Assembly: GCF_006345805.1 (NCBI RefSeq)
Contig: NC_042998.1
Span: forward strand, 77,500,001-77,564,000
Reading direction: 5' to 3'
Origin: Octopus sinensis
Lineage: Eukaryota
DNA: 64,000 nucleotides
Every line of letters starts with the position of its first letter. The stretch's first letter is position 1. A program made the translations under genes and the position numbers. This document shows positions 26,480-61,972 of this stretch, piece by piece. Below the pieces are notes generated by a model. The model ran no database searches. It was not told where the DNA came from and worked only from the letters and a program-made list of their open reading frames with translations.

Positions 26480-28153
26480 GACGTCACCGTCATAGTGTCT
26501 AGCCACGAGCACATCGAGCTGGTCGGCGAGACACTGAAAAACTACGAAGCGGTGACAGGAGCGAAAATCAACCGGGAAAAGTCAGTGGGCTTGCGACTAG
26601 GCACCTGGAGAAGCAAGCCCATGCCGTCCACCAGCGCCTCCGTCGTGGGACGCTGGACCGACGGCCCGGTTGAGTTGCTCGGGGTCTGGTTTGGTCCGGA
26701 CCTCCAAGTGGAGAAGAACTGGAACGAGATAACGAGTAGGGTGGTCACTCTCGCCCGGCAATGGGCCGAGAGGAAACTGTCCCTAAAAGGTCGAGCGGAG
26801 GTGGCGAACACGTACATCGCGTCCGTCATCTACTACCGCCTGACCGTCGTACCTTGTCCCGACCCTACCATCACCAAACTACAACGCATCCTCTTTCGCT
26901 TCTTGTGGAAAGGATGCGTCCCGATGGTCAGGCGATCCATTTGCTGTCAACACCCGTTAAAAGGAGGGCTGGGCATGCCGTGGTTGATGATGCGCAGACA
27001 CGCGCTGAGACTGCGACATCTCTGGCTCTATGTAGACGACGGTGAACAGGTGTGGTCGCCGTTTGTGAGGCACGCTTTCCCGCAGCTCGTCTCCATGACC
27101 TAACTGCAGTCGTGGATCAAAAAGAGGCCGAGGAAGGGCGAATGGCACCGCGAGTGTCGCGTTGCTCTCAAGCAACTCTGCCGTCCTGGGTCGACCTTAA
27201 GTGACTTCAACACAACCAAAGCATTCTATAGGGGTTTAGTGGAGGGGAGGTACGACGACGAGCTCGGGGCGAACTTGGACGTCGACGAGGAGTACCTGAC
27301 CCGCCTGTTCGGGACGACTTTCGGGCCAGGGCCCATGGACAACTTCCAGAGATCCCTGGCCTGGCAGTGCTACCGAGAAGCGCTACCGTTCGGGATAAGC
27401 TCTACAGACACGGCTCGAGAAACACGGGGCCGACCTGCCCGAGATGCGGTCAGAGCGACGAAACCGTTCTGCACGCACTCGTTCAGTGTCCAACAATTTC
27501 CGACCTGTGGGCTTATGTCGAACAACTGCTGTCACGTGTGGGACGAGTCGGTTTATCAGCTGAGTCTATCGTCAATATTGTCACGCCTCCTTCCTTCAAA
27601 CGGGAAGGAAGAGCTATTTTCATCATCCTTGTGGCTATGGCGAAAGAATGTATCTGGTGGACGCGTCTGAAAGGATTGGAAACAAACACTTTCCTCTCTG
27701 GTCAATCTCTCATCAACTTCTTCAAGTACCACTTGAAAAGGAAAGTGAGAGTAGAGAGGCAAGTTTTGTCTAGCGAATGTTTTAAAAAAAGATGGGTGAA
27801 TGTAGCAAGAATGGCACGTATGAATGACGAAGCCACCTTGAGCATAGTCCTATGAACCCAGAAATCGAAAACAGAGAGTTGCTTATTTGCAAAAAAAAAA
27901 AAAAAAAAAAGAAATATAAAATGTGACTTCATTGACCGAGGTTACCGTGGTCTTTTCCGCAGGCTTTTCTTTCCACGGGTAAACCTCACCTGTCCTCCCC
28001 TTTACACTTCATATTGACATTTCTGTGATAACGATCCCTATTGATCATTTTTTTTTCCTCTCCCCCCCCTTTTTTTTTTTTTTTTTTTTAACCCCCCTTA
28101 TTTTTGTCCTCTTTCTCTCCTTTTACGATCCCTTTTGATCGAACCTCCCCCTT

Positions 28154-33264: not shown

Positions 33265-35959
33265 TATACAAGCCATGTAGGCAAGTTTGAAGACTGCCTT
33301 ATAAAAATAGAAGTTCTAATCACATTAGAACAACACATAAGTGTACTTCTTATGGGAGACTTCAATCTACCCAATGTCAGTTGGCCCGAGGGCCTTTCTC
33401 TCCTAGGAATGACAAGATGTGAACGAGGACAGGCGAGGTCCCTCCTGAACCTCATCAACACCCTGTACATGGAGCAAGTAATACTCCAACCAACCAGGGC
33501 AGGTAACACACTGGATCTCTGCTTCACAAATAATATGGATCTCATCCATAATGTGAAAGTGACACCGACACTACTCTCGGATCACAACATGGTAGAGCTG
33601 ACCATGTACGGGCCAAAGGAAAGCATAGACATGCAGCCTACAAGAAACCCTCAGAATCTTTCCAGCTTGAACTTCCATAAGGCAAACTGGAAACAAATTG
33701 AGAAAGAGATCCTTAAAAAAACTGGCCTGAGTGTCTCTCCTCGCCAGACATCGACGTGAAACTTCAACAATTCATGTCTGTAATGCAAGCCATATGCTAC
33801 AAATGTGTCCCAGAGAGAAAGGCCACTGTACACAAGAACAAAATCTCCAGAGAGAGGAAAATTCTAATGAGACGGCGTACAAAAATTTCAAATCGCCTAA
33901 ACAAACAAATTGAAAGCAGTGAAAAGTCCCGCCTGAAAATGAAACTGTTGGAAATTGAAAAAGGTCTGCAAATCTCCCATGAAAAGGAAAGAGCAGACAA
34001 AGAAGCCTGGGCTATAGACAACATAAAATCTAATCCCAGAGCTTTCTACAGGTATGCCAAAGAAACAGCTACGGTTCACTGTAGGATAGGGCCACTCCTT
34101 GAAAGGGATGGCACACTCACAGGAAATCCAATGAGGGTAAGTGAAATACTAAATGAGCAATTCAAGAGTGTTTCCACCCCACCCCTTGGGCATTTCCAAA
34201 TCAGCAATCCAACTGACTTCTTCACCACTGCAGATATGGGGTCTGAGGCGGCGATGATTGATTACATCAATATAAAGGAAGACGATGTAATAAAGGCTAT
34301 AGATGAGATGAAAACAAACTCAGCTACTGGCCCCGATGGATTCCCGGCAATCCTTCTAAAAGTATGTAAGAGAGTCCTAGCAAGACCACTGCAGTCTCTC
34401 TTTCAGAGCTTCCTTGCAACTGGCAAACTTCCAAGAAAACTGAAGGAAGGTAAAATATGCCCTATTCATAAAGGAGGTAGCAGAGCGGAGGCCAAGAACT
34501 ACAGACCTATCTCTCTGACCTCACACATCAGCAAGGTCATGGAACGAATAGTCAGAAGGAAAAAAATCGCCTTCCTTGAAGAAAATAACTTGCTGTCTGA
34601 CACCCAACATGGTTTCCGACCAGGAAGAAGCTGCTTAACTCAGCTCCTACAACACTATGACTGGGTGCTGAAACGACTGCTCAACCACTCAAATGTGGAA
34701 GTGATATATCTCGACTTTGCAAAAGCCTTTGATAAAGTCGATCATGGAATGATATGTCACAAACTGCGTGATCTTGGCATAGTTGGAAAATTGGGAGAAT
34801 GGCTTCATGACTTTCTGGAGGATAGAAGCCAGGTGGTAGTAGCCAATGGGGCCACTTCCATTAACACGCAAATAGTGAGCGGTGTTCCGCAGGGCACTGT
34901 TTTGGGACCACTACTGTTCATAATGGCCCTCTCAGACATGCCCTCAGCCACGCAGAGAGCCACGATCACAAGTTATGCAGATGATACAAAAGTTTCACAG
35001 GCAATACAGAACCCTGAAGACACTAAGCACCTGCAATGTGAGCTGGACAAAATATACAAGTGGGCTGAAAAGAATAGCATGTAGTTCAATGCTGAAAAGT
35101 TTTAAGCTTTATGCTATCAGCATGCAAAACTGAATGCAATACCCAATGAATACACTGGACCCGGAGGGATTTCAATCCCAGAGGCACAATCAGTGCGTGA
35201 CCTGGGTATTCACATGAGTGATGACGCGACCTTTCATGTACATGTTGCTAAACTGGCAATGAAATGTAGACGGCTGGCCGGATGGATTCTTAGAACCTTT
35301 AGAACAAGAGAACAAGAAACCATGATGGTCCTCTGGAAGACACTTGTCCTAAGCCACTTTGACTATTGCTCTCATCTATGGTCACCATCCAGTGTCAAGT
35401 TGATCACAGAACTTGGGGCGATCCAACGAAGCTACACGAAGAAGATAGCCTCTGTGCAGCATATAAGCTACTGGGAAAGACTCAAGAGATTAAAACTCTA
35501 TTCCTTGGAGCGTAGGCGAGAAAGATATGCCATAATATACATCTGGAAGATCCTGGAAGGACTTGTCCCAAACTTTGGCATCGAGAGTCACACAAATGCC
35601 AGAACCGGGCGCCACTGCGTGGTACCAAGGACTCCAAATTTGCCATCAAGATGTAGGACAAGATACTGTGATAGCCTGGGCTTCAAGAGGCCCACAGCTC
35701 TTCAATATCCTCCCGAAGGACCTGAGGGACCTGCATGGTGTAGATGCGGATGTCTTTAAAGTAGGACTGGATCTCTTCCTGTCAGGTGTCCCGGATGAAC
35801 CAACTTCACGGCAGGAGGTGCAGATGAGGGCAGCTGCATCGAATTCTCTCATGCACCAAATGGCAGTTGCTAAAAAGCATTTGTGAGGCAAAATCATGTA
35901 GCAAACCAAATGGCGGTGCCCCAGCATGGCCACAGCTCATGAGCTGAAACTGGAAAAAT
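33265..35959 (+). mobile_element. 5'-truncated CR1-type LINE (end of APE, RT, 3' UTR) with stops and frameshifts
   Basis: MGDFNLP..NTLDLCFTN..SDHNMV (APE); ATGPDGFP..NYRPISLTSHISKVME..QHGFRPGRSC..YLDFAKAFDKVDH..GVPQGTVLGPLLF..YADDTK (RT); 3' end GGCGGTGCCCCAGCATGGCCACAGCTC. Confidence 0.95.
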
Positions 35960-39452: not shown

Positions 39453-40818
39453 TTATGAAGAGTCTGAGAATTACTTGAAAAGTTAATGGGCGTAGGAACG
39501 GTATTGACTGAAACAAAACAATTTTTTCCTAATTACGCATCTGTGTGTAAATATGCTGTTATAATTATTCAAGAAAAGGTGATTTTTAACAACTAAATAA
39601 ATCTCCATCCTTAGAATTTGTTTGATAAAATCGATTAGCGTTAAACGTTATCCTATGGAAGTCTTACACATTTTTATAATTCGACTTATAGATTGTATTT
39701 GTAACTTGCGTACAAGCTGAACAATTTTCCTGAAAAATATGCCCGATTGCCGATTAAACATACTTTCATTAATAAATATACTATTATTTTTCGCTTGAAA
39801 TGTGTATCTATATTCTAGGTAGAAAAGCTAGAATGTTTTTTTATATACATTTTCCATTTCAGAGAAGTTGAATAATGGATATATGTATTGATGGACAAAT
39901 CCAATAAATATGAGACCCGTTCTAAGAAACAAAGATTTATCATTTGAATTTCGATAATAACAAAATTATTTTCACGTCCTGTATATCAGAAATATCTTGC
40001 ATAATACCTGGTTTCAGTTTTGGTTAATTTCATTATTCTGGATATTAGAAGAGTTGGATGTTTTCCTCTTAGCAGGCCGCTGTTCAAGACCATTTCATAA
40101 ACATTGATTAACGTAATAAGTGAACCAATGGTTATAGTAATAATGTAAATGTATAACATTGGCTGAAAGTTGAACAAACCGAAATACTTTACCGTAAATG
40201 TCTTAGAATTTCGAAACAATGCTAACAAACACTGGATTGTTACCCTACATAAAATTATCATAAGTCAAACTATTAAGCATAAATATTTCCAGTGGCAAAT
40301 TTTCATTATTCTAATAACTGAAAATTGTATGAAATCTTGTTGTATTTTGGCATTGTATAAATTTCCTGTTCAGACTGTGAGCTACAATCGTATTTCTAGC
40401 AGCTGTCAGCAGTTATATTCAAGCACTGCTTTCTTTTGTAAAATGAAAGTGTGGATTCGTGCCAACGTTAATAAACGCACCCAAACAGATGAAACATTTT
40501 TATTTCCGTTACTTTCAATGAGCATGCTTACCCAGGGCACTTTTTCTCAAATGGCATACCCCGGACAACAATCAGTAGGGAAGAGAGAACATCGTCATCT
40601 TGGAATCAGCTCATACTCTTATACGATTTCTACAATTATTTCACGTCCACTGCATAAATTTCTTATCTTTTCATAGTGAGACACATCACTACATCTCTAC
40701 ACTTTTGCTTGCTCAACAATTATCATCTTTTTCAGCATACTTCCAAACTGCTGGTAATGTTTGAAGCGTCAACATGTTTGGACTTATTATAGACCCATAG
40801 ATTTCTAAGGCATGAATG

Positions 40819-40884
<66 letters not shown>

Positions 40885-40902
40885 ATACAAACACACACAT
40901 AT

Positions 40903-42885
40903 AAAGAAATATACGGACCTTCCACACATGGACAGGCTCCTCTGAAGAGTAAAGACGGAGCGACCATCCTGAAAAGCAACACCGAAATAGGAGACAGATG
41001 GAGAGAACACTTCGATGACCTCCTCAATCACAAGGCTACCATCGACAAAAGCATACTTGACATGATTCCTAAAGAGGCCAAAGATTACTCTCTCGCTCGA
41101 ATTCCATCCCTCGAAGAGGTCAAAATTGCTATCACAGCGATGAAGAACAACAAAGCCGCGGGTCCTGACGGAATCCCAGCTGAGATCTACAAACTGGGAG
41201 GTGATTTTGTCCAACACCAGCTCCACCAACTCTTGGTCAAAATCTGGACAAATGAAGTTGTACCATCCGACTTCAGGGATGCAAGCATCATTACCATTTA
41301 CAAACGAAAGGACGATCATTCTGAGTGTGGAAATTACAGGGTATTTCCTTATTAGCAACTGCTGGGAAGATTCTTACACGGATCCTGAACAACCGCCTCA
41401 AAACGCTGACAGAGAGGATCCTTCCTGAGACGCAGACCGGCTTTAGGCCATCACGAAGCACAACCGACATGATCCTCACGCTGCGACAGCTACAAGAAAA
41501 ATGTCGTGAGCAACACTAACCGCTCTATTTGGCCTTTACCGACCTATCCAAAGCCTTTGATCGTGTCTCACGAGAGCTCCTCTGGGATACTCTCGCCCAG
41601 TATGGATGCCCAGATAAGTTCATCCGGATCCTGAAACTCCTCCACGACAATATGCACGCCAGAGTCCAGACCGACGCAGGCAGTTCTGAGCCCTTTAAAG
41701 TCACCCTCGGAGTGAAGCAAGGCTGCGTGATAGCGCCAACTCTCTTTACCATCTTTATTGCGACAGTGTTGCACATCATACTAGATGACCTTCCACCTGG
41801 CATCGAGATCTCGTACAGAATGGACGGCAAGCTTTTCAACCTCGCTCCCCTCAAAAGTACGTCAAAGACAATGACGCGAAGCTTGCTAGTGTTCCAATAT
41901 GCCGACGACAACAGTGTAGCAGCTTACAGAGGGGATCACCTCCAACAGATCCTAAATGTCTTTCATCATGCATATACTAAACTTGGACTGAGCATCAACA
42001 TCAAGAAGACTCACTTACTCTACCAACCTCCTCCCAATGCCCGTGTTGACAACCCGCTATCGATTCAACTCGAAGGAATTCCTCTGGAAAATGTGAACCA
42101 TTTCTGCTACCTTGGGAGCCATCTGTCAGCAAAGGTAGACCTCAGCGATGAAATCCAACACCGTCTAAAGTGTGCAGGAACAGCTTTCGGCAAGCTTCGA
42201 ACAAGAGTTTTTGCTGATCTGGACATCCGAACCGAAACCAAACTCATGGTATACAGGGCAGTCATTATTCCAACCCTCCTTTACGCACCCGAAACCTGGA
42301 CCCCGTATAGTCACCACCTGAAAACGCTCGAGAAATTTCACCAACGCTGTCTTCTGAAGATCCTTAACATCAGCTGGGAAGACAGAAGAACTAACGTCAG
42401 CGTGCTACAAGAAGCAAAAATGACCAGCATCGAAGCCTATGTCATCAAAGGCCAACTAAGATGGAGCGGCCACGTGGTTAGAATGACTGACGAACGACTT
42501 CCCAAACAGATCTTCTACTCCCAACTCAAAGACGGCAAGCGTACAAAAGGAGGCCAGAAGAAACGCTACAAGGACTCCCTGAAAACGAACCTCAAAAAGT
42601 GTGACATCGATTTCACTAACTGGGAGGAAACGGCAAAAAACAGACCACTCTGGAAAACCACCATCCATGAGGGAACGGTGACTTTCGGGTCGAAAAGGTC
42701 TGCAGAGCTGGAGGAGAAAAGACGACGACGGAAGGAGCGCCAACAACAACCACGTGCGACTCTCCCTTCCGGCACTGGATGTGCGCACTGCGACCGATCT
42801 TTTCAAGCAAGAATTGGTCTTATCAGTCACCTACGGACTCACCAGTAAATTTGCGCGAAGACCATCATCCTCGACCTTGAGGGAT

Positions 42886-42893
<8 letters not shown>
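40903..42893 (+). mobile_element. 5'-truncated RTE (BovB-like) LINE, relatively young
   Basis: KAAGPDGIPAEIYKLGG; AFTDLSKAFDRVSRELLW; GVKQGCVIAPTLF; FQYADD; CAHCDRSFQARIGLISHLRTH; 3' stem-loop ATCCTC..GAGGGAT; 439-aa open stretch 41529-42848. Confidence 0.95.
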
Positions 42894-42943
<50 letters not shown>

Positions 42944-46687: not shown

Positions 46688-48140
46688 CCTACATATAATA
46701 TGTATATAATTAAGAGACAAAACCTTTAGTAAGTAATTCAATTAATAGTGAAAGGTATTATCTATAATAAATCATATAGAAAGAATTTAGATATATTACA
46801 ATAAATATTATCCTAAAAATCACTAAATTAAATAAACATTAAATTGACTACGCGTGTTTCGTGACTATATATTTAAATCGATGATTTTAAAATCGATAAT
46901 ATTAAAAGTTAATTTTAAACGTTAAACTAAGAGATTAGCGTTGCTAAGAAATCTGTCACGTTAAAACATAACGTAAATAATAAATATAGGATAAATAAAT
47001 AGAAATCTGTATTTTAGGGGTGAAAATAAATAAACTTGACGTGATTTACCATTTACTGAGAAAAAGTCTAAATTCTCAATAATTTAAAACTAAAACTTTA
47101 TACGTAATATAATAAAATAAATTTCGATAAATTAATATATATTCATCAATTTATTTATTTATTTTATAAACACCTTGGTTTAATCTTATTCTAGGTTACA
47201 CTTCATAATCTACGGCTAAATTATACTCATTATACTATTACAAATTATAACTATAAATTTGTAACATAAATCAGGGTTTATATATATATACGCAAATTAG
47301 ATAAACTTATTACATAAGTAATTTAACCTATGTCTACAATTAATTTTTCTCTCATCTAGGTAATTAATGAATATTTTTATTATTAGATAGTAATATCTGT
47401 ATAAATTCATTTGTACATTGTAAACAAAAATTATTACCCATTCGATAAGACTTAACTTTACAAACTATCTCCAAATTTAAATTATACTTAATTCCTTTAG
47501 ATTTCAATTCCCATATATATTTGCTAAGGCCAGTAGAACTAATCAATGTTTTATTCTTAAATGAATGCATGTGTTGAGCCACCATTAATTTAATTTTATT
47601 AGAAGTCGAGCCCACATAAATCGCATTTAAATTATAACTATTCCTATTAATACTATCATCTCTCAGAGATATAAAGCATTTATATACTACATCATCCACA
47701 TTACATTTATGTTTAAATTTACATTTTGTCTTATCTATGCATGTAGAATTAATTATATTCTGCTCATTATTATTATTGGAATAATTATTTAATTTGTTAA
47801 TGTAAAATTTATTCAGCTTCAATTTATTAAAAGAAGAAATAATGTTACCAACAGTGTTAGTAGTAGAATAACCAACTCCAAAATTATTACTAGAAAACTT
47901 GTTATTATAATTTTAAATCGAATTAATATCAACTTTTAATATTATCGATTTAAATATATAGTCACGAAACGCGCGTAGTCAATTTAATGTTTATTTAATT
48001 TAGTGATTTTTAGAATAATATTTATTACGATATATTTAAATTCTTTCTATATGATTTATTATAGATAATATCTTTCACTATTAATTGAATTACATAATAG
48101 AGGTTTTGCTTCTTAATTATAGACATATATTAGATATTAT
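46682..48140 (-). mobile_element. Penelope-like element fragment (GIY-YIG) bracketed by an inverted copy of its own 3' terminal ~230 bp
   Basis: ORF 47364-47822 CNVDDVVYKC..IYVGSTSN..HMHSFKNK..TGLSKYIWELK..CLQC; arms about 46682-46911 and 47922-48140. Confidence 0.88.
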
Positions 48141-50148: not shown

Positions 50149-52728
50149 TATTATTATTGTTGTTATTATTATTATTATTATGTTTTTTCCTTCTTTCTTC
50201 AAATTTTCTTCCGTTTCTCGCCGAGTGTTTTCCATACACCTAGGGCAGAGAAGGGCATTGTATGCATTCCCAGATTACACGCGCAAATTCACAGATAAAA
50301 TATGTATTTAAAAATTAATAAATAAATTCATGGATGAATGTTATTTTCACAGCGATAGCGCTCTTCTCAGTACATGAGCCGTTCCAATTAATATGATTTT
50401 TTTGCACTTCCTGTAGGGATGGTAAGCCTGGAATCATTTTCAAATAGGTTTCATTGCCTTTTTTTTTATCATTCCTAGAGATCATACAATCACTGGTACT
50501 GTAGTCGCCTTGAGATGACACATTTTTTTCAATTTCCATTAGCAGGTCTTTATATTTACTAATCTTGTCAAATTCTTTCGCCGCTATATTGTGATCACAG
50601 AGAATACTCATGTCAATTAATAAACACATCCGTTTTGTCTGATCTTTTATAATGATATCCGGTTTATTGGCTTTTATAGTCATGTCGGTCTGCAAGGGGA
50701 AGTCCCATAGAATCGACACATTTTCTCCCTCAGTCACAGCTTCAGGATGATATTTATACCATTTGTCAACGGTTTTGATTTTATAATGCCGACATATTGT
50801 CCAGTATAAATACTGGCCGACTCTGTCATGTCTTGCTTTATATTCTGCAGGTGCTAAGACTCTACACCCTGAGATTATGTGGTCTATTTCAATCTCATCG
50901 TTACAGAATCAGCATTTTGGGTCAGCTCCATTTTTTATCACATTGGCTTGGTAGTTCCGGGTAAATAAGCTTTGGTCTTGAGCAGCTAATATGAAACCTT
51001 CACTCTCTGCTTTTAGCCCTGAACTTCGTAACCATTGGTGCGTGTGTTTCTGGTCGACATCAGCTTGTTTGCTACGGGCCACATACTTGCCATGGAGAGG
51101 TTTCTGTTCCCATCTGCTAGCTAAATTTTCAAGTGCTTTTGTCTTTGCAATTAATTTTCTTTTCTTTGCAGCTGCAGTTGGCGCATTTCATTCAGCCTGC
51201 TCAATCTGGTGGGTATGTAAGAGATCAGCAGCGAATTTTTTGCTCTCTTTGAGAATAGAGTGATGTTTCTTAGGTCTTTCATGCTTTTCAACAAGTTTTA
51301 GCATCCAATCGTTGGTTGTTTCAAGGTATTTGGCCAGTCCGATTGTGGTGGTTTTGTATGTGAGTTCAAGCTGGATCAAACCTCGACTTCCCTGAGCTCT
51401 GGGAAGGTAAAGGCGATCCACGTCTACCTTTGGATGGTGCATCTTATTACAAGTCAGTAGCTTGCGGATTTTCCTGTCAATTTTCATTATTTCACTAGTA
51501 TTCCAGTTGCTACTGAAGCTATAAAGAACAACTGGTACTGCTAAGGAATTTATGGCTAAAACCTTATTATATGCATTCAGCTCAGACTTCAGGACTGCTC
51601 GAACTCTTCTATAACATTTTTTCCTAACCTTCTCTTTCATGCTTGCATGCTGGATACCAGAGCCTTCATTTATTCCTAGGTATTTATAGGTCTGTTCCTG
51701 CTCAAGTTCCTTTATTACTATTTCGACATCTAATTCGATTGAACTAGACTTTACCAATTTCCCTTTCTTAAAAGTGGCTTTGGCACACTTTTCAAGGCCA
51801 AACTCCATCCCGATATCATCACTGAATCCTTTCACAGTATGTAATAATCCTTCAAGCTCTTCATCATCCTTGCCATATAGCTTTAGGTCATCCATATAAA
51901 ATAGATGGCTTATTTTCTTGTTGTCAATTTTGTAGCCATATCCTGTTCTATTCAGTTCACTTGTGAGTGGTATTAGTGCTATGCAGAATATTAGTGGTGA
52001 AAGTGAGTCACCTTGGAAAATTCCACAGTTTATGCTAATGTTGTTTGAGTGCAATACTCCATTAGGATGATATAATTGGTGCTTCATGTTCTATAGTGAC
52101 ATATTATACTTTAAAAAATCTGAAATCATAGGAGAAATTTTGAAAATGTCCAGCGATTTCAGAATCCACGAACGTGGTATGCTGTCAAAGGCTTTTTTAT
52201 AATCAATCCATGAAGAGCTGAGATTTCTGCGCTTGTTATGGCAGTTCTCAAGGATCATGCGATTAATTAGGAGCTGATCTTTGCATCCGTATGAGCCTCG
52301 TCTGCATCCTTTTTGTTCAGTGGGAAAGAGGTTATTCTCTTCCATAAACGTATATGTTTTCTCTACAATAGATGTCAAGATCTTATAGGTAGTAGATAAA
52401 CATGTTATAGGCTGATAGTTTTTTGGGTCTTTCGTTTTGTTATTTTTGGGGAGGAGGTAAGTAATACCATTTGCCATCCAATGTGGTGTTTTTTTTCGGG
52501 TCTTTCATAATACTATTAAATAGTATTACTAACATTTTGTGTGCGGACGAGAGTGATGAGAGCTAGAAATTTGGTACTCTATCAATACCAGGGGATTTCC
52601 ACTTATGAGCCTTCGTTAGTGCTCTCCTTAGATCGGCGATTGAGATGTCTTCCCATACCTGTTCTTGTAGATTTTTGTAATCATCTTGGGTGCGTTTGAT
52701 CCACTCATCTTGGGTGCGTTTGATCCAC

Positions 52729-54660: not shown

Positions 54661-55397
54661 CTGTACGAGATTAATTTAATCAACGAAGTATATGAGCATC
54701 ATCTTTCACTCCCGATAGTACTGGGTTCTTGAAGCTAAATTGTTCTTTAGAATTTCCTGGCATGCATATTCTCTGTTACCAAACTAATACCAAATACTCA
54801 ATAATAATTATGCATTTATGATTTGTTTACAGATATTTTTCTTACTCTTACAGGCAAGTTTTCTCATTCATTATTCAAATTAGGAATCTGCAATTTAGTA
54901 ATCAGCGCAGTGGCAGTCATTGAGTGTGTCACAGCAAAATGCTGGTGCATTCCTTTTTTCAATTACAATGTTATTTTGCCGAAACTCATTTGTTTTTACT
55001 CTAGAATAGTGTTCGAACTATGAATATTCATTATTCGTTTACAGAATAAACAAGTTGCGCGACAGTTAATTCTAAGTTGGGTAAAAATGAATGAAATAGA
55101 ACGCAGTGATGCACGTTGATTGATAAGAATGCTTCTGAGTACCAAATATCCAATTAAGAAAATTAATATTTATTATTTGATTTTAGTACATAAATCAAGT
55201 AGGCCTAGAGTCAGCTTCGTTTGGTGCTTGCTCTAATGCTTTTGAGGAAGAATTTGAATCCACTGCAACTAAAATGGTTAAAATAACGCAGGGTACATGT
55301 TTTCATGCCATATTCGTACATACGTACATCTATTCCATACGTACATATCTATGTATCTAACTACCTATCTGTTTGTCTGTCTATGTATGTATGTATG

Positions 55398-55453
<56 letters not shown>

Positions 55454-55478
55454 CACGTATATGTATGTATATATATAT

Positions 55479-55513
<35 letters not shown>

Positions 55514-55561
55514 CAGACACGTATATGTATGTATATATATACACATATATACATATATATA

Positions 55562-55617
<56 letters not shown>

Positions 55618-55618
<1 letters not shown>

Positions 55619-56210
55619 ACGGGAAGGTTTACGAAAATAAACAAAAGACGAAGGCAGGTGGAGTACAAACAAATGTATTAGTATGGCGCTCAGGAATAGA
55701 AATAGAACAAGTCTTTTACGTTTCGAGCCTACGCTCTTCGACAGAAAGATACACAGAAAAGAAACAAGGAGAGAAAAAAATGCGTGTAGGAGCTAACGGT
55801 CCATTATGGCGTACTGACTTCAGGCAGAAGTCAGAGGTTAGACGCTAGAGGGATAGTAGGGGAGATAACAGGGTCAAGTGACTTCGCCCCAACACGAAGG
55901 TCCGTGTGTGTATAAGAGAGTATGTATGTGCGTGTGAAAGAGGGCTGGTGGTCTGGACGTGTGTATGTATGTGTGAGTGTGGAGATATGGGGATGGGTGA
56001 GTGAGTGGTGTGTTGTGATATGATATGTGTATGTATGTGTAGGTGTAAAGATGTGGGGATGGGTGTGTGGGCAGTGTGCTGTGGGTGGTGTGTTGTGATG
56101 TGATGTGTAATGTCGTATGGTTTAGTGTAGTGTGGTGTGATGTTGTGGGGAGGGGGTGCGAGAGTGGGGAAAGCCCATATGGGGTGTGGGTTCGGCTGGG
56201 GGTTGGGGTG
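55618..56210 (-). mobile_element. Hammerhead-bearing repeat with CA-rich upstream region, both ends in (TA)n
   Basis: Longest copy of the family; terminus ..GTAAACCTTCCCGTT then TATATA. Confidence 0.75.
55712..55749 (-). ncRNA. Minimal hammerhead-like motif, variant core CUGUCGA
   Basis: UCUUU-CUGUCGA-A-GAGC(GUAG)GCUC-GAAA-CG-U-A-AAAGA; 5-bp stem I and 4-bp stem II perfect. Confidence 0.7.
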
Positions 56211-56636
56211 TATATATATATATACAGTCAAAAATTGTGAAGCATGACTGTCAACACTACTACATGAACCCGAAGATTGCAGAATTCAATGCATGAAAGT
56301 ACTAGTTCAATCAGAATGAATATTTAACATTCTACTATTTCATTTTATTTTATTCAATTATAATATATTATCTTATAATATATCATTATAAGATTGTAAA
56401 TAAAACGTGAAAATCAGACAGGTTGGAATTCTTTTTATAATATATATATATATATATAATATATATATATATATACCAATTAAGGACTGAACACGAAAAG
56501 GTGGACAGTCAACATGCTAGATATAGACGTCAAATCGCCATTCTCCACAAGGATTATGTTCTCAAATAAAAATAAAATTCAGCACGACCTAAAGCAATGG
56601 ATGAGACAAAAGAAATATACTAAATGGAATAATTAC

Positions 56637-56696
56637 CTACGTACTGCAGTTTCAGCTATTAATATCACAAGGATATCTGTAGCTTCATCAGCGTAG
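56637..56696 (-). ncRNA. Intact type-I hammerhead ribozyme (minus-strand copy)
   Basis: Reverse complement of 57058-57117. Confidence 0.88.
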
Positions 56697-57057
56697 TTTG
56701 TTATGAGCATAATATGCTGTACTAGATGAAAAACGGTACCGGAGTCCCGCATGCAAAAAGTACAACCTATTACGTTCGGATGTATCTTTCGAATGCCTCT
56801 ACTTTTGGCGCGCTGATAATCTGGTTTTAATTGACTAATATCAATTTCTACCCTTAATTTTTAAATATGAAATATATGTTCTCAAACCGATAAATTGACT
56901 GCTGCTAATTATTGGCTGCAGGCTAGTTTTTCGATTATCAGCGCGCCAAAAGTAGAGGCATTCGAAAGATACATCCGAACGTAATAGGTTGTACTTTTTG
57001 CATGCGGGACTCCGGTACCGTTTTTCATCTAGTACAGCATATTATGCTCATAACAAA

Positions 57058-57117
57058 CTACGCTGATGAAGCTACAGATATCCTTGTGATATTAATAGCT
57101 GAAACTGCAGTACGTAG
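57058..57117 (+). ncRNA. Intact type-I hammerhead ribozyme
   Basis: CUACG-CUGAUGA-AGCUA(ca GAUAUC cuugu GAUAUU aa)UAGCU-GAAA-CUGCAG-UA-CGUAG: all core positions canonical, stems I and II perfect, stem III palindromic ACUGCAGU. Confidence 0.88.
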
Positions 57118-57447
57118 GTAATTATTCCATTTAGTATATTTCTTTTGTCTCATCCATTGCTTTAGGTCGTGCTGAATTTTATTTTTATTTGAGAACATAA
57201 TCCTTGTGGAGAATGGCGATTTGACGTCTATATCTAGCATGTTGACTGTCCACCTTTTCGTGTTCAGTCCTTAATTGGTATATATAAATATTTTAATCTT
57301 CGGATTCTTTTTAATGTGCTAGACCACTGGTTTTAATTGACTAATATCAATTTCTACCCTTAATTTTTAAATATATATATATATATATATATGAAAAATG
57401 TATGGTAAATAACATACCATACGATATAGCACATACTGAGTGTAAAA

Positions 57448-58203
57448 CCGGACGGGAGACAAACATAGAAGGTTATCAACCAATTGCTAATACATAGTTT
57501 TGTACCTTTTATAAGACAGAGCTTTATAATTGGCGGCGCCCGCAAAAAATTCTTTTTGCGGAGAATTCAGGGTCGAGAGCAGACATAACAAAGCAAAATG
57601 ACACAGAGTGTGATTTAGGTCGGTGGACAAAGTCGAGCAAAATATAGCGTTAGGGCAAAGAAGATAAGAATAGTAGGTAACGCTTAGAAAAAGTCCTAAA
57701 TGAAGGAAAGCCAAAGAATCTGCAACTGATCAGATCTGGACAAGTGTAGGTGGGTCAACAGGCAGAGGAGAATGACAGCAAGGAAAAGGGAGGAAGAGAG
57801 AAAGAGAGAGTGAATAAAAAGGGAATGCCTGCAGATGTGCAAAGAGAGAGAGAGAGACAGAAAGTCTGCTATATAGGTATATGGACAAAGTATAAATGGA
57901 GTGGTTTGTTTTATGTTGCAAATATACGCTGTTGGTATTTTGGTTGCTTTGAAATTATAATTTCTCCACCGTTTTCTAGTTACTGTGTTATTTAAAGAAA
58001 TATGCTAGATATAGACGCCACTGAAATTTCTCTTTCTTTTTAATGACACACATCTATAATATACATCGGCAGAGTTATCCTTACAGTTCTTCAGACGAAA
58101 TGACTGATTGTCATTTGTAAATAAAATAATGTTTACAGTTTTAAATTCATATGTTAAAGTTTTAAATTCATATCTGAAACTTGTCAGCTCATTTGAAGAA
58201 ATC
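57448..58203. repeat. Two-module repeat: module A 57448-57577, module B 57670-58203
   Basis: A is the reverse complement of 61821-61972; B is a direct diverged copy of 61305-61820. Confidence 0.85.
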
Positions 58204-61304: not shown

Positions 61305-61972
61305 ATAGTAGGTAACGCTTAGAAAAAGTCCTTAAGGAAAGAGAGACAAAGAATTTGTGACTGGTCAGCTCAGGACCAGTGTAGGTGAGTCACATAACAG
61401 TAACAGGCAGAGGAGAATGACAGCAAGGAAAGGGAGGAAGAGAGACAGAGAGAGGGAATAAAAGGAGAAAGCCTGCAGGAATGCAAAGAGAGAGTGACAG
61501 AAAGTCTGCTATATAGGTATATAGACAAAAAGTATAAATGGAGTGGTTTGTTTTATGTTGCAAAGTATCCGCTGGTGGTATTTTGTTTGCTTTGAAATTA
61601 TAATTTCTCCACCGTTTTCTAGTTACTGTGTTATTTAAAGAAATAACCATTGCAACTTTTCTTCCTTTATAATGACTCACATCTATAATATACATCGGCA
61701 GAGTTATCCTTACAGTTCTTTAGACTACATGACTGATTGTCATTTGTAAATAAGATAATGTTTAGTTAATGTTCTAAATCTCAATTCATATCTCAAACTT
61801 GCCAGCTCGTTTGAAGAAATGCCCTCGGCCATGAATTCTCCGCAAAAGAGTTTTTTGCGGGCGCCGCCAATTATGAAGCTCTCAGTCTTACTAAAGGTAC
61901 AAAACTGTGTATTAGCAATTGGTTGATAACTGTTGAAGAATAAGGGACCTTCTGTGTTTGTCTCCTGTCCGG
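61305..61972. repeat. Second copy of the two-module repeat, order B then inverted A
   Basis: See 57448-58203. Confidence 0.85.

What the first reader, a model, noticed from the sequence alone, without database searches (positions are those of the whole stretch)
56470..57285. Intact hammerhead ribozyme present on both strands through a perfect 350-bp inverted repeat
Seen: fully canonical core, perfect 5-bp stems I and II (II extended by a further 6-bp helix), 8-nt palindromic stem III and a GUA site. There is one copy per arm, pointing outward, with both ends in (TA)n. Transcription in either direction gives a self-cleaving RNA, and read-through gives a 350-bp dsRNA. Identical arms imply a very recent event, so the parent element may be active, or else a fold-back assembly artefact.
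Basis: partly seen in the sequence, partly recalled or inferred. Interest (0 to 1): 0.85.

Follow-up and report, generated by a model that had tools for sequence, protein, structure and literature searches.

The report
Inverted retroelement pair carrying hammerhead motifs
In what looks like an octopus genome, a small non-coding retroelement with a hammerhead ribozyme motif lies as two identical head-to-head copies in a (TA)n microsatellite, the layout already described for Penelope-like retroelements, so it is a young example of a known kind and not a new one.

Summary
The two arms are perfectly complementary over 354 nt (56468-56821 and 56933-57286), or 359 nt with one mismatch, around a 111-nt spacer. 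Each arm carries a 60-nt hammerhead motif pointing outward (+ 57058-57117, - 56696-56637). The core is canonical, stems I and II are 5 bp, stem II has a further 6-bp helix, helix III is the palindrome ACUGCAGU, and the site is GUA. These are the only two matches in the 64 kb; 2500 resampled windows gave none.

Cautions: no Rfam hammerhead model matches, even at E<=10. The 10.1-11.1 pair is A-U, not the usual G-C. No relatives could be reached, so covariation and copy number are untested.

Interpretation: the short palindromic helix III marks the metazoan hammerheads that are thought to act as dimers. The head-to-head arms, a 40-nt extension on one side only, the (TA)n junctions and the lack of any ORF match published Penelope-like element (PLE) insertions. 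I read it as a PLE-type solo-pLTR or non-autonomous insertion made in one event less than about 1 My ago.

A monomer does not form helix III, each transcript carries one sense copy, and a read-through RNA buries the motif in a -677 kcal/mol hairpin. This is a known kind and of modest interest.

The parts
56436..56475 (.). Left (TA)n microsatellite, about 21 units. It forms the junction with the 3' end of the inverted copy and is the presumed target.
   Evidence: Tandem Repeats Finder; sequence.
56468..56821 (-). Left arm: the inverted copy of the element, sense on the - strand. Its 3' end faces left and its 5'-truncated end is at 56821. The unique part is 56476-56821.
   Evidence: Inverted repeat. 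Perfect complementarity over 354 nt checked base by base. blastn 100% over 343 nt.
56637..56696 (-). Hammerhead motif on the - strand. Predicted cleavage is after A56642.
   Evidence: Descriptor scans.
56821..56877 (+). X1, the first copy of a 48-57-nt direct repeat. It lies at the junction of the two 5' ends and contains TTGACT...CCTTAATT...TAAATAT.
   Evidence: Direct repeat family D5, 48 nt at 100%; blastn 57 nt at 96.5%; motif positions.
56878..56932 (+). S, a unique 55-nt segment that extends the right-hand copy 5' of the arm. It contains a third TTGACT.
   Evidence: Sequence. No other copy in the window. TTGACT at 56895.
56933..57286 (+). Right arm: the direct copy of the element, sense on the + strand. 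The unique part is 56933-57278, and it ends in CCTTAATTGG followed by (TA)4.
57058..57117 (+). Hammerhead motif on the + strand. Stem I 57058-62 / 57113-17; core 57063-69; stem II 57070-74 / 57096-100 with a distal helix 57077-82 / 57088-93; GAA 57101-03; palindromic helix III 57104-11; A17 at 57112.
57287..57326 (+). T, an extension of about 40 nt present only at the outer (3') end of the right-hand copy. It is the candidate PLE 'tail'. Its length is 35-48 nt depending on how the (TA)4 overlap is assigned.
   Evidence: Base-by-base comparison of the arm ends. A tail of 30-40 bp at one end is described for PLEs (PMC8557442; PMC3846280; PMC11167929).
57327..57382 (+). X2, the second copy of the direct repeat, followed directly by (TA)11. 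It is either the true 3' end of the element or duplicated target DNA.
57371..57392 (.). Right (TA)11 microsatellite.
   Evidence: Tandem Repeats Finder.

Best explanation
This is one insertion of a small, ORF-less retroelement of the Penelope-like element (PLE) kind, either a solo pLTR or a non-autonomous 'retrozyme-like' derivative. It lies in a (TA)n microsatellite of an octopus genome.

Anatomy (shown):
- The right-hand copy is the longer one. It runs X1-S-arm-T-X2, 56821-57382, about 560 nt, which is 1.1 units of a repeat unit of about 506 nt.
- The left-hand copy is a shorter inverted copy (arm only, 346-354 nt) joined to it head to head.
- Each copy carries a type I hammerhead with a 2-bp helix III closed by the palindromic tetraloop UGCA. 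Read together these form the 8-nt palindrome ACUGCAGU.

Mechanism (inferred):
1. A source copy elsewhere is transcribed.
2. In multimeric or paired transcripts, two hammerheads pair through the palindrome into a double hammerhead and cut after GUA, releasing unit-length RNA.
3. A PLE reverse transcriptase/GIY-YIG endonuclease supplied in trans nicks both strands of the (TA)n target and primes cDNA synthesis on both.
4. Synthesis starts at one of two TA-rich internal sites that follow a repeated TTGACT...CCTTAATT...TAAATAT module. This explains why one copy has an extra 3' extension.
5. The two 5'-truncated cDNA ends are joined, giving identical arms from the outset.

At this locus the ribozyme is probably idle. 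The two copies are antisense to each other, so local transcription through both arms would give a hairpin dsRNA of about 354 bp. That is a plausible small-RNA precursor rather than a self-cleaving RNA.
For: Hammerhead motif:
- It is complete and non-random: the only two matches in 64 kb, against 0.005, 0.02 and 0/2500 matches in resampled windows.
- Two copies are predicted to form the double hammerhead as the minimum-energy dimer, -37.3 against 2 x -15.1 kcal/mol.
- Helix III does not form in a monomer, while stems I and II do.
- Published PLE and invertebrate hammerheads have a short helix I (4-5 bp), an enlarged helix II and a small palindromic helix III, and are thought to work as dimers (PMC4209133; PMC7229834; PMC6765202).

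Insertion architecture:
- The typical PLE insertion has an inverted pLTR head to head with a direct pLTR, plus a 30-40-bp tail at the 3' end of only one of them (PMC3846280; PMC8557442). Here the arms are head to head, with a one-sided extension of about 40 nt.
- Purified PLE protein cleaves and extends both DNA strands and starts reverse transcription at two internal sites that delimit the tail (PMC11167929).
- Some PLE clades prefer (TA)n targets (PMC8557442), and (TA)n is present at both outer junctions.
- Hammerhead pairs 100-700 bp apart on opposite strands are reported in Schistosoma (PMC4209133). Here the two cleavage sites are 470 nt apart.

Element content and host:
- There is no ORF in any frame of the unit and no tRNA-like part.
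- The 3' end of X resembles the 3' end of the arm: local alignment score 26 against a null 95th percentile of 22. TTGACT occurs three independent times in the unit, against 39 on both strands of the whole window.
- The host is an octopus. Penelope families counted as active are annotated in O. vulgaris (PMC13282606).
Against: - No Rfam hammerhead model matches, at gathering score or at E<=10 on 1.2 kb and on 111 nt.
- The 10.1-11.1 pair is A-U, whereas G-C is described as highly conserved in PLE hammerheads (PMC4209133).
- No second copy of the element was found in the window. None was found in any collection reachable here. Family membership, copy number and stem covariation are therefore untested.
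- No PLE reverse transcriptase or GIY-YIG ORF was recognised among the Pfam-scanned ORFs or the ORF lists; the three RVT_1 hits sit in LINE-like ORFs.
- The role of the 48-nt repeat X is unresolved. If X is target DNA, its copy between the two arms needs an extra template switch. If X is element sequence, the one-sided extension is about 90 nt, longer than the published 30-40 bp.
- PLE hammerheads cleave poorly in vitro, and cleavage was dispensable for insertion in the one reconstituted system (PMC11167929).
Confidence: 0.6

Rival explanations
1. DNA-level inverted duplication. A single hammerhead-bearing element copy (X-S-arm-T-X) was already present next to a (TA)n tract. A replication template switch or fold-back repair at the hairpin-prone (TA)n then copied 346 nt of it in inverted orientation. 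No retrotransposition machinery made the second arm.
For: (TA)n tracts flank the structure. The left arm is a strict subset of the right-hand copy. The spacer is asymmetric. The left junction lies within TA microhomology.
Against: This model needs a coincidence with the published PLE geometry of head-to-head copies with a short one-sided 3' extension. It also gives no reason for the inner breakpoint to coincide exactly with the start of the X repeat at 56821.
Confidence: 0.15
2. Assembly artefact. One real copy was turned into an inverted pair by a chimeric or fold-back read, or by mis-joining at the (TA)n repeats.
For: The arms are identical. Microsatellites lie at the borders. PLE tandem/inverted structures are known to cause assembly problems (PMC8557442; PMC3846280).
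Against: The arms are only 354 nt long, with different unique sequence on both sides. The 111-nt spacer is asymmetric and contains a repeat that is also found 506 nt downstream. Missed-adapter or fold-back reads usually give long palindromes that run to the end of the read (general knowledge, not tested here). [quoted passage not shown]
Confidence: 0.1
3. A fold-back or MITE-like DNA transposon with very long terminal inverted repeats and a TA target duplication. The hammerhead-like sequence would be a chance match with no ribozyme function.
For: Perfect terminal inverted repeats are bordered by TA on both sides. No hammerhead hit in Rfam. Stem II closes with a non-consensus A-U pair. MITEs and Tc1/mariner elements are annotated in octopus (PMC13282606).
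Against: The chance of such a motif is 0.005 per 64-kb window or lower, with 0 in 2500 resamples once the palindromic helix III is required. Scaled to one 346-nt arm, this is below about 3e-5. The right end is not symmetric with the left, because of the 40-nt extension and the X repeat. I recognised no transposase-family terminal motif (my own reading, not a test).
Confidence: 0.05

Closest known systems
Penelope-like element (PLE) insertions with inverted pLTRs and a 'tail' (Arkhipova et al. 2013, PMC3846280; Craig et al. 2021, PMC8557442)
   Same: Head-to-head inverted repeat units. A short extension (31 bp, or 30-40 bp, in the literature; about 40 nt here) at the 3' end of only one unit. 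A hammerhead inside the repeat unit. Junctions in a (TA)n microsatellite that hide any target duplication. Solo pLTRs and pLTR pairs without PLE coding sequence are reported.
   Different: There is no RT/GIY-YIG ORF between or beside the repeats, and no autonomous partner was identified in the 64 kb. The extra 48-nt direct repeat X has no exact published counterpart that I found. Membership of a PLE family could not be tested by homology.
Minimal or dimer-type type I hammerheads of metazoan PLEs (Cervera & de la Pena 2014, PMC4209133; Lunse et al. 2017 as cited in PMC6765202)
   Same: Canonical core, a 5-bp helix I, an enlarged helix II and a small palindromic helix III that allows a double hammerhead. 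Pairs occur on opposite strands a few hundred nt apart.
   Different: The 10.1-11.1 pair is A-U instead of the highly conserved G-C. Seen another way, the usually unpaired nucleotide after A9 is here paired with an extra U. Helix II carries a 2x2 internal loop and a 6-bp distal helix. No Rfam hit. Activity is untested.
Metazoan non-LTR retrozymes (Cervera & de la Pena 2020, PMC7229834; Li et al. 2026 bioRxiv 10.64898/2026.07.22.740005)
   Same: Small, AT-rich, non-coding elements with a type I hammerhead whose helix III is 2 bp plus a tetraloop, described as 'similar to invertebrate HHRs'. They are proposed to be non-autonomous derivatives of PLE pLTRs.
   Different: Retrozymes are defined by tandem arrays with at least two hammerheads in the same orientation and units of about 300 bp. 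Here there are only 1.1 direct units of about 506 nt plus one inverted partial copy, so no unit-length RNA can be excised from this locus.
Hairpin-RNA (long inverted-repeat) loci that feed small-RNA pathways
   Same: A read-through transcript would fold into a perfect stem of about 354 bp with a 111-nt loop.
   Different: There is no evidence of transcription or small RNAs here. The Rfam hits to plant MIR families are below gathering score and reflect only the long hairpin.

Membership tests
Hammerhead ribozyme (type I) | Conserved core: C3 U4 G5 A6 N7 G8 A9, G12 A13 A14, A15.1-U16.1, and H17 that is not G | tested here: met
   CUGAUGA ... GAA A...U A is read directly at 57063-57112 and found by the descriptor scans.
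Hammerhead ribozyme (type I) | Helices I and II flank the core, with helix I open (type I topology) | tested here: met
   Stem I is CUACG/CGUAG and stem II is AGCUA/UAGCU plus a distal 6-bp helix. Pair probabilities are 0.54-0.85 for stem I and 0.98-1.0 for stem II in a 579-nt transcript.
Hammerhead ribozyme (type I) | Helix III, or a palindromic substitute that allows a double hammerhead | tested here: met
   The palindrome is ACUGCAGU. The monomer helix III has probability 0.0. The minimum-energy dimer is the double hammerhead with an 8-bp helix III, -37.3 kcal/mol.
Hammerhead ribozyme (type I) | G10.1-C11.1 closing pair of helix II (highly conserved, though not absolutely required) | tested here: not met
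   The pair is A57070-U57100. The conservation is stated in PMC4209133.
Hammerhead ribozyme (type I) | Match to a curated covariance model (Rfam Hammerhead_1, _3, _II, HH9, HH10) | tested here: not met
   No hammerhead hit at gathering score, nor at E<=10 on 1.2 kb or on 111 nt. The short conserved boxes, the 21-nt insertion in helix II and the minimal helix III may account for this (inference).
Hammerhead ribozyme (type I) | Compensatory changes in the helices across related copies | not testable with these tools
   The two copies are identical, and no relatives were found.
Hammerhead ribozyme (type I) | Site-specific self-cleavage | not testable with these tools
   This needs in vitro transcription of monomer and tandem-dimer constructs.
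Penelope-like element insertion (pLTR) | Head-to-head inverted repeat units generated at insertion | tested here: met
   The arms have their 5'-truncated ends inward and their 3' ends outward. The published structure is described.
Penelope-like element insertion (pLTR) | A 30-40-bp 'tail' at the 3' end of only one unit | tested here: inconclusive
   A one-sided extension is present. It is 40 nt (57287-57326) if X2 is flank, but about 90 nt if X2 belongs to the element.
Penelope-like element insertion (pLTR) | Hammerhead motif within the repeat unit | tested here: met
.
Penelope-like element insertion (pLTR) | ORF with a telomerase-like RT and a GIY-YIG endonuclease | tested here: not met
   No ORF in the unit. 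Pfam gave RVT_1 hits in three LINE-like ORFs and no GIY-YIG hit, and nothing PLE-like was seen among ORFs of 52-64 kb. At most, therefore, this is a solo-pLTR or non-autonomous derivative.
Penelope-like element insertion (pLTR) | Sequence homology of the repeat to the pLTR of an autonomous PLE in the same genome | not testable with these tools
   No eukaryotic genome collection is searchable by DNA here. The indirect routes failed.
Metazoan non-LTR retrozyme | Tandem array with at least two hammerheads in the same orientation | tested here: not met
   There are only 1.1 direct units, and the two hammerheads are on opposite strands.
MITE / fold-back DNA transposon | Symmetric terminal inverted repeats bordered by a target-site duplication, in many copies | tested here: inconclusive
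   The inverted repeats are bordered by TA, but the right end carries an asymmetric extension. Copy number is not testable, and there is no other copy in the window.

The most novel reading that the evidence does not exclude
The element is a currently active, roughly 0.5-kb non-autonomous ribozyme-bearing retroelement of octopus. PLE-type two-strand priming would routinely deposit it as perfect hairpin-forming pairs. Each new insertion would then create a dsRNA / small-RNA source against its own family, a built-in feedback between a ribozyme-bearing retroelement and RNA silencing. The repeated TTGACT...CCTTAATT...TAAATAT module would mark the two internal start sites of reverse transcription.
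Probability: 0.1. Interest if true: 0.55.

Novelty: new member of a known kind. Interest (0 to 1): 0.3.

Why it matters
If confirmed, this is a very young insertion of a hammerhead-bearing, PLE-type element in an octopus genome. With zero differences over 2 x 346 nt, I estimate its age at less than about 1.2 My. That uses the rate implied by the published O. vulgaris calibration (Jukes-Cantor (JC) distance 0.09 = 25 My, PMC13282606) and assumes no gene conversion. Such a young copy would point to recent or ongoing PLE-type retrotransposition in cephalopods.

It also offers a clean single-event example for studying how PLE machinery makes head-to-head copies with a one-sided tail.

The finding has a practical side for annotation: this class of dimer-type hammerhead is not reported by any Rfam model. 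The long perfect hairpin also produces spurious below-threshold plant-miRNA matches.

It does not reveal a new kind of ribozyme or a new mechanism.

Tried and rejected
1. Rfam: no hammerhead family at gathering score on the whole window, or at E<=10 on 1.2 kb and 111 nt. The only matches are sub-threshold plant MIR2630, MIR8007 and MIR9563. They align nothing but the long hairpin, so I rejected them as generic.

2. Other copies in the window: none. There is only a 22-nt, 91% match at 57999-58020, which does not extend.

3. Relatives by the protein route:
- The 60-aa and two 39-aa arm ORFs are not on record.
- The 60-aa ORF has no homologue.

4. Relatives by DNA pattern: the hammerhead pattern and a 24-mer are absent from metagenome contigs, and the hammerhead pattern is also absent from viral contigs.

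5. SINE or tRNA origin: no tRNA-like gene in 55-59 kb.

6. Autonomous PLE nearby:
- Pfam found RVT_1 in three LINE-like ORFs and zf-RVT in a fourth.
- Nothing PLE-like was seen among the ORFs of 52-64 kb.
- A 152-aa ORF at 47364-47822 (-) looked GIY-YIG-like by eye. It has no Pfam, PDB or database support, so I did not use it.

7. Coding remnant in the arms: all three forward frames are full of stops.

8. SMRTbell-adapter spacer (missed-adapter chimera): from memory of the adapter sequence, the spacer does not resemble it. The spacer also contains a genomic repeat found 506 nt downstream.

9. An octopus locus fetched for comparison (L001) has no copy of the element.
Full report
**1. What is in the sequence**

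The region 56436-57392 has this layout:

| Part | Coordinates | Note |
|---|---|---|
| (TA)n | 56436-56475 | about 21 units |
| Left arm | to 56821 | inverted copy |
| X1 | 56821-56877 | direct repeat, first copy |
| S | 56878-56932 | unique |
| Right arm | 56933-57286 | direct copy |
| T | 57287-57326 | 40 nt, present on this side only |
| X2 | 57327-57382 | direct repeat, second copy |
| (TA)11 | 57371-57392 | |

- The repeat finder reports 359-nt arms at 100% with 111 nt between them.
- Base by base, the arms are perfect over 354 nt (56468-56821 / 56933-57286), with one mismatch at 56467/57287.
- The outer 8 nt of each arm are (TA)4, so the unique arm is 346 nt.
- The two X copies are identical over 48 nt and 96.5% identical over 57 nt.

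**2. The hammerhead motif**

On the + strand at 57058-57117 the sequence reads CUACG-CUGAUGA-AGCUA-CA-GAUAUC-CUUGU-GAUAUU-AA-UAGCU-GAA-ACUGCAGU-A-CGUAG. The mirror image lies on the - strand at 56696-56637.

- All core positions are canonical, and H17 is A.
- A descriptor scan of both strands of the 64 kb finds only these two copies.
- First-order Markov resamples give 0.095 hits per window for a lax descriptor and 0.005 for stems >=5/>=5. A relaxed dimer-type descriptor gives 0.02. Stems >=5/>=5 plus a palindromic helix III gives 0 in 2500 resamples.
- A single match in a genome of a few Gb would not be proof on its own, because chance alone could give tens of matches. Here the match sits inside a structure that independently carries the marks of hammerhead-bearing retroelements (section 4).

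Two cautions apply:
- No Rfam hammerhead model reports the motif, at gathering score or at E<=10 on 1.2 kb and on 111 nt.
- Stem II closes with A-U where G10.1-C11.1 is described as highly conserved (PMC4209133).

The Rfam miss may reflect the short conserved boxes, the 21-nt distal helix in stem II and the minimal helix III. That is inference, not something I tested.

**3. Folding**

- As a 60-nt monomer, the hammerhead fold scores -10.2 kcal/mol. An alternative fold that pairs C3-G5 with part of helix III scores -15.1 kcal/mol.
- Two copies cofold into the classical double hammerhead, with an intermolecular 8-bp helix III and swapped stems I. This scores -37.3 kcal/mol, against -30.2 for two separate monomers.
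- In a transcript that starts in the spacer (56822-57400), stems I and II have pair probabilities of 0.54-0.85 and 0.98-1.0. The monomer helix III has probability 0.0.
- A transcript across both arms folds into a hairpin of -677.5 kcal/mol with 358 of 359 mirror pairs. The hammerhead is then fully paired to its antisense copy.

The claim that either transcript self-cleaves does not follow, because each transcript carries only one sense copy of a ribozyme of the type thought to need two.

**4. What it is**

The helix III design is 2 bp plus a palindromic tetraloop. Together with the short helix I and the enlarged helix II, this is the published architecture of metazoan type I hammerheads in Penelope-like elements and retrozymes. 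These are thought to act as dimers and cleave weakly in vitro (PMC4209133; PMC7229834; PMC6765202).

The same 2014 paper already notes hammerhead pairs 100-700 bp apart on opposite strands. Here the two cleavage sites are 470 nt apart.

The geometry also matches:
- The typical PLE insertion has an inverted pLTR head to head with a direct pLTR.
- It also has a 31-bp (30-40 bp) tail at the 3' end of one of them only (PMC3846280; PMC8557442).
- Some clades prefer (TA)n targets, which hides target duplications (PMC8557442).
- Purified PLE protein nicks and extends both strands. It starts reverse transcription at two internal RNA sites that delimit the tail (PMC11167929).

At this locus the arms are head to head with their 3' ends outward. 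The left 3' end abuts (TA)n, and only the right-hand copy carries a 40-nt extension. The unit has no ORF in any forward frame and no tRNA-like part.

I therefore read it as a solo-pLTR or non-autonomous PLE-type insertion made in one event. That also explains the identical arms without a separate duplication.

**5. The unresolved repeat X**

There are two readings.

(i) X is element sequence.
- The right-hand copy is then a partial tandem (X-S-arm-T-X, 1.1 units of about 506 nt).
- The whole insertion sits in a simple (TA)n.
- The two copies used different internal start sites.

(ii) X is target DNA and T is a classical 40-nt tail.
- The X copy between the arms then needs an extra template switch onto the target.

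Weak evidence favours (i):
- The 3' end of X resembles the 3' end of the arm (CCTTAATT..TAAATAT). The local alignment score is 26, against a null 95th percentile of 22 and a maximum of 29 in 500 shuffles.
- TTGACT occurs three independent times, in one orientation, in the unit. It occurs 39 times on both strands of the whole 64 kb.

Only other genomic copies or an empty site can settle this.

**6. Host and age**

- A LINE reverse-transcriptase ORF in the window is 88% identical to an Octopus sinensis protein.
- The O. sinensis locus L001 shares 95% nucleotide identity over 1990 bp with window 40905-42894. The window therefore comes from an octopus or a close relative.
- Penelope-like families are annotated in O. 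vulgaris, including 31 families in the table of active elements (PMC13282606).
- That paper equates JC distance 0.09 with 25 My, which implies about 3.6e-9 substitutions per site per year. Two 346-nt arms should then accumulate about 2.5 differences per My.
- None is seen, which puts the event below about 1.2 My at 95%, unless gene conversion keeps the arms identical. This is my own estimate.

**7. Rivals**

- DNA-level inverted duplication at the hairpin-prone (TA)n (confidence 0.15). It would need to mimic PLE geometry by coincidence.
- Assembly artefact (0.10). It cannot be excluded without reads. The short arms, the asymmetric spacer holding a repeat also found 506 nt downstream, and the unique flanks on both sides argue against a fold-back read.
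- MITE or fold-back DNA transposon with a chance hammerhead (0.05). The motif statistics and the asymmetric right end argue against it.

**8. What could not be done**

- No eukaryotic genome collection could be searched by DNA, and the indirect routes failed. Arm ORFs were tried as protein queries and exact DNA patterns were scanned in metagenome and viral contigs.
- Family membership, copy number, stem covariation and the autonomous partner therefore remain untested.
- No PLE ORF was recognised in the window.

**9. Verdict**

The motif and the hairpin are real features of the sequence.
- Novelty: a new member of a known kind.
- Interest: 0.3.

Noticed in passing
window 47364-47822 (- strand): A 152-aa AT-rich ORF whose sequence (..VVYKC..., ..IYVGSTSNKIKLMVAQH.., C-terminal CLQC) looks GIY-YIG-like by eye. 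It has no Pfam hit even at E<=10 (apart from noise), no PDB hit and no database homologue. It could be a decayed endonuclease remnant or nothing at all.
   Followed up: partly
window 26495-27855 (+), 33352-35759 (+), 40816-42848 (+), 51188-52477 (-): Several LINE-type retrotransposon fragments with RVT_1 or zf-RVT domains. The copy at 40905-42894 is 95% identical in DNA to an Octopus sinensis locus (GCA_006345805.1, CM016862.1), which identifies the host as an octopus or a close relative.
   Followed up: partly
window 57448-58202 and 61305-61972: Another repeated element lies just to the right of the finding. 57670-58202 matches 61305-61820 (83%, same strand). 57472-57581 matches 61820-61930 in inverted orientation (90%). 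The two segments are therefore arranged differently at the two loci. It may be a DNA transposon or SINE with a terminal repeat. Not classified.
   Followed up: no
window 56511-56532 and 57999-58020: A 22-nt, 91% match between the left arm and the neighbouring repeat. It does not extend under local alignment (score 34; 0.5% of shuffles reach it). It could be a chance match or a trace of an old related sequence.
   Followed up: partly
window 56831, 56895, 57242, 57337 (+); 56852, 57269, 57358 (+): TTGACT occurs three independent times in one orientation within the roughly 560-nt element, against 39 on both strands of the whole window. Two of these occurrences are followed by CCTTAATT and TAAATAT just before the junctions with (TA)n. 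This may be a recognition or initiation module for the mobilising enzyme. Unexplained.
   Followed up: partly
window 56745-57009: In Rfam E-value mode the long perfect hairpin gives sub-threshold matches to plant miRNA precursor families (MIR2630 at 84.8 bits against a gathering score of 144; also MIR8007 and MIR9563). These are generic long-hairpin matches, not miRNA genes.
   Followed up: yes
window 55382-55618 and 55960-56097: The left flank holds a 237-bp imperfect (TA)n and a TG-rich minisatellite with a 66-nt period. The whole window is dense in TA, TG and TATG-type microsatellites, which produce long spurious ORFs rich in Y, I, C and V.
   Followed up: no
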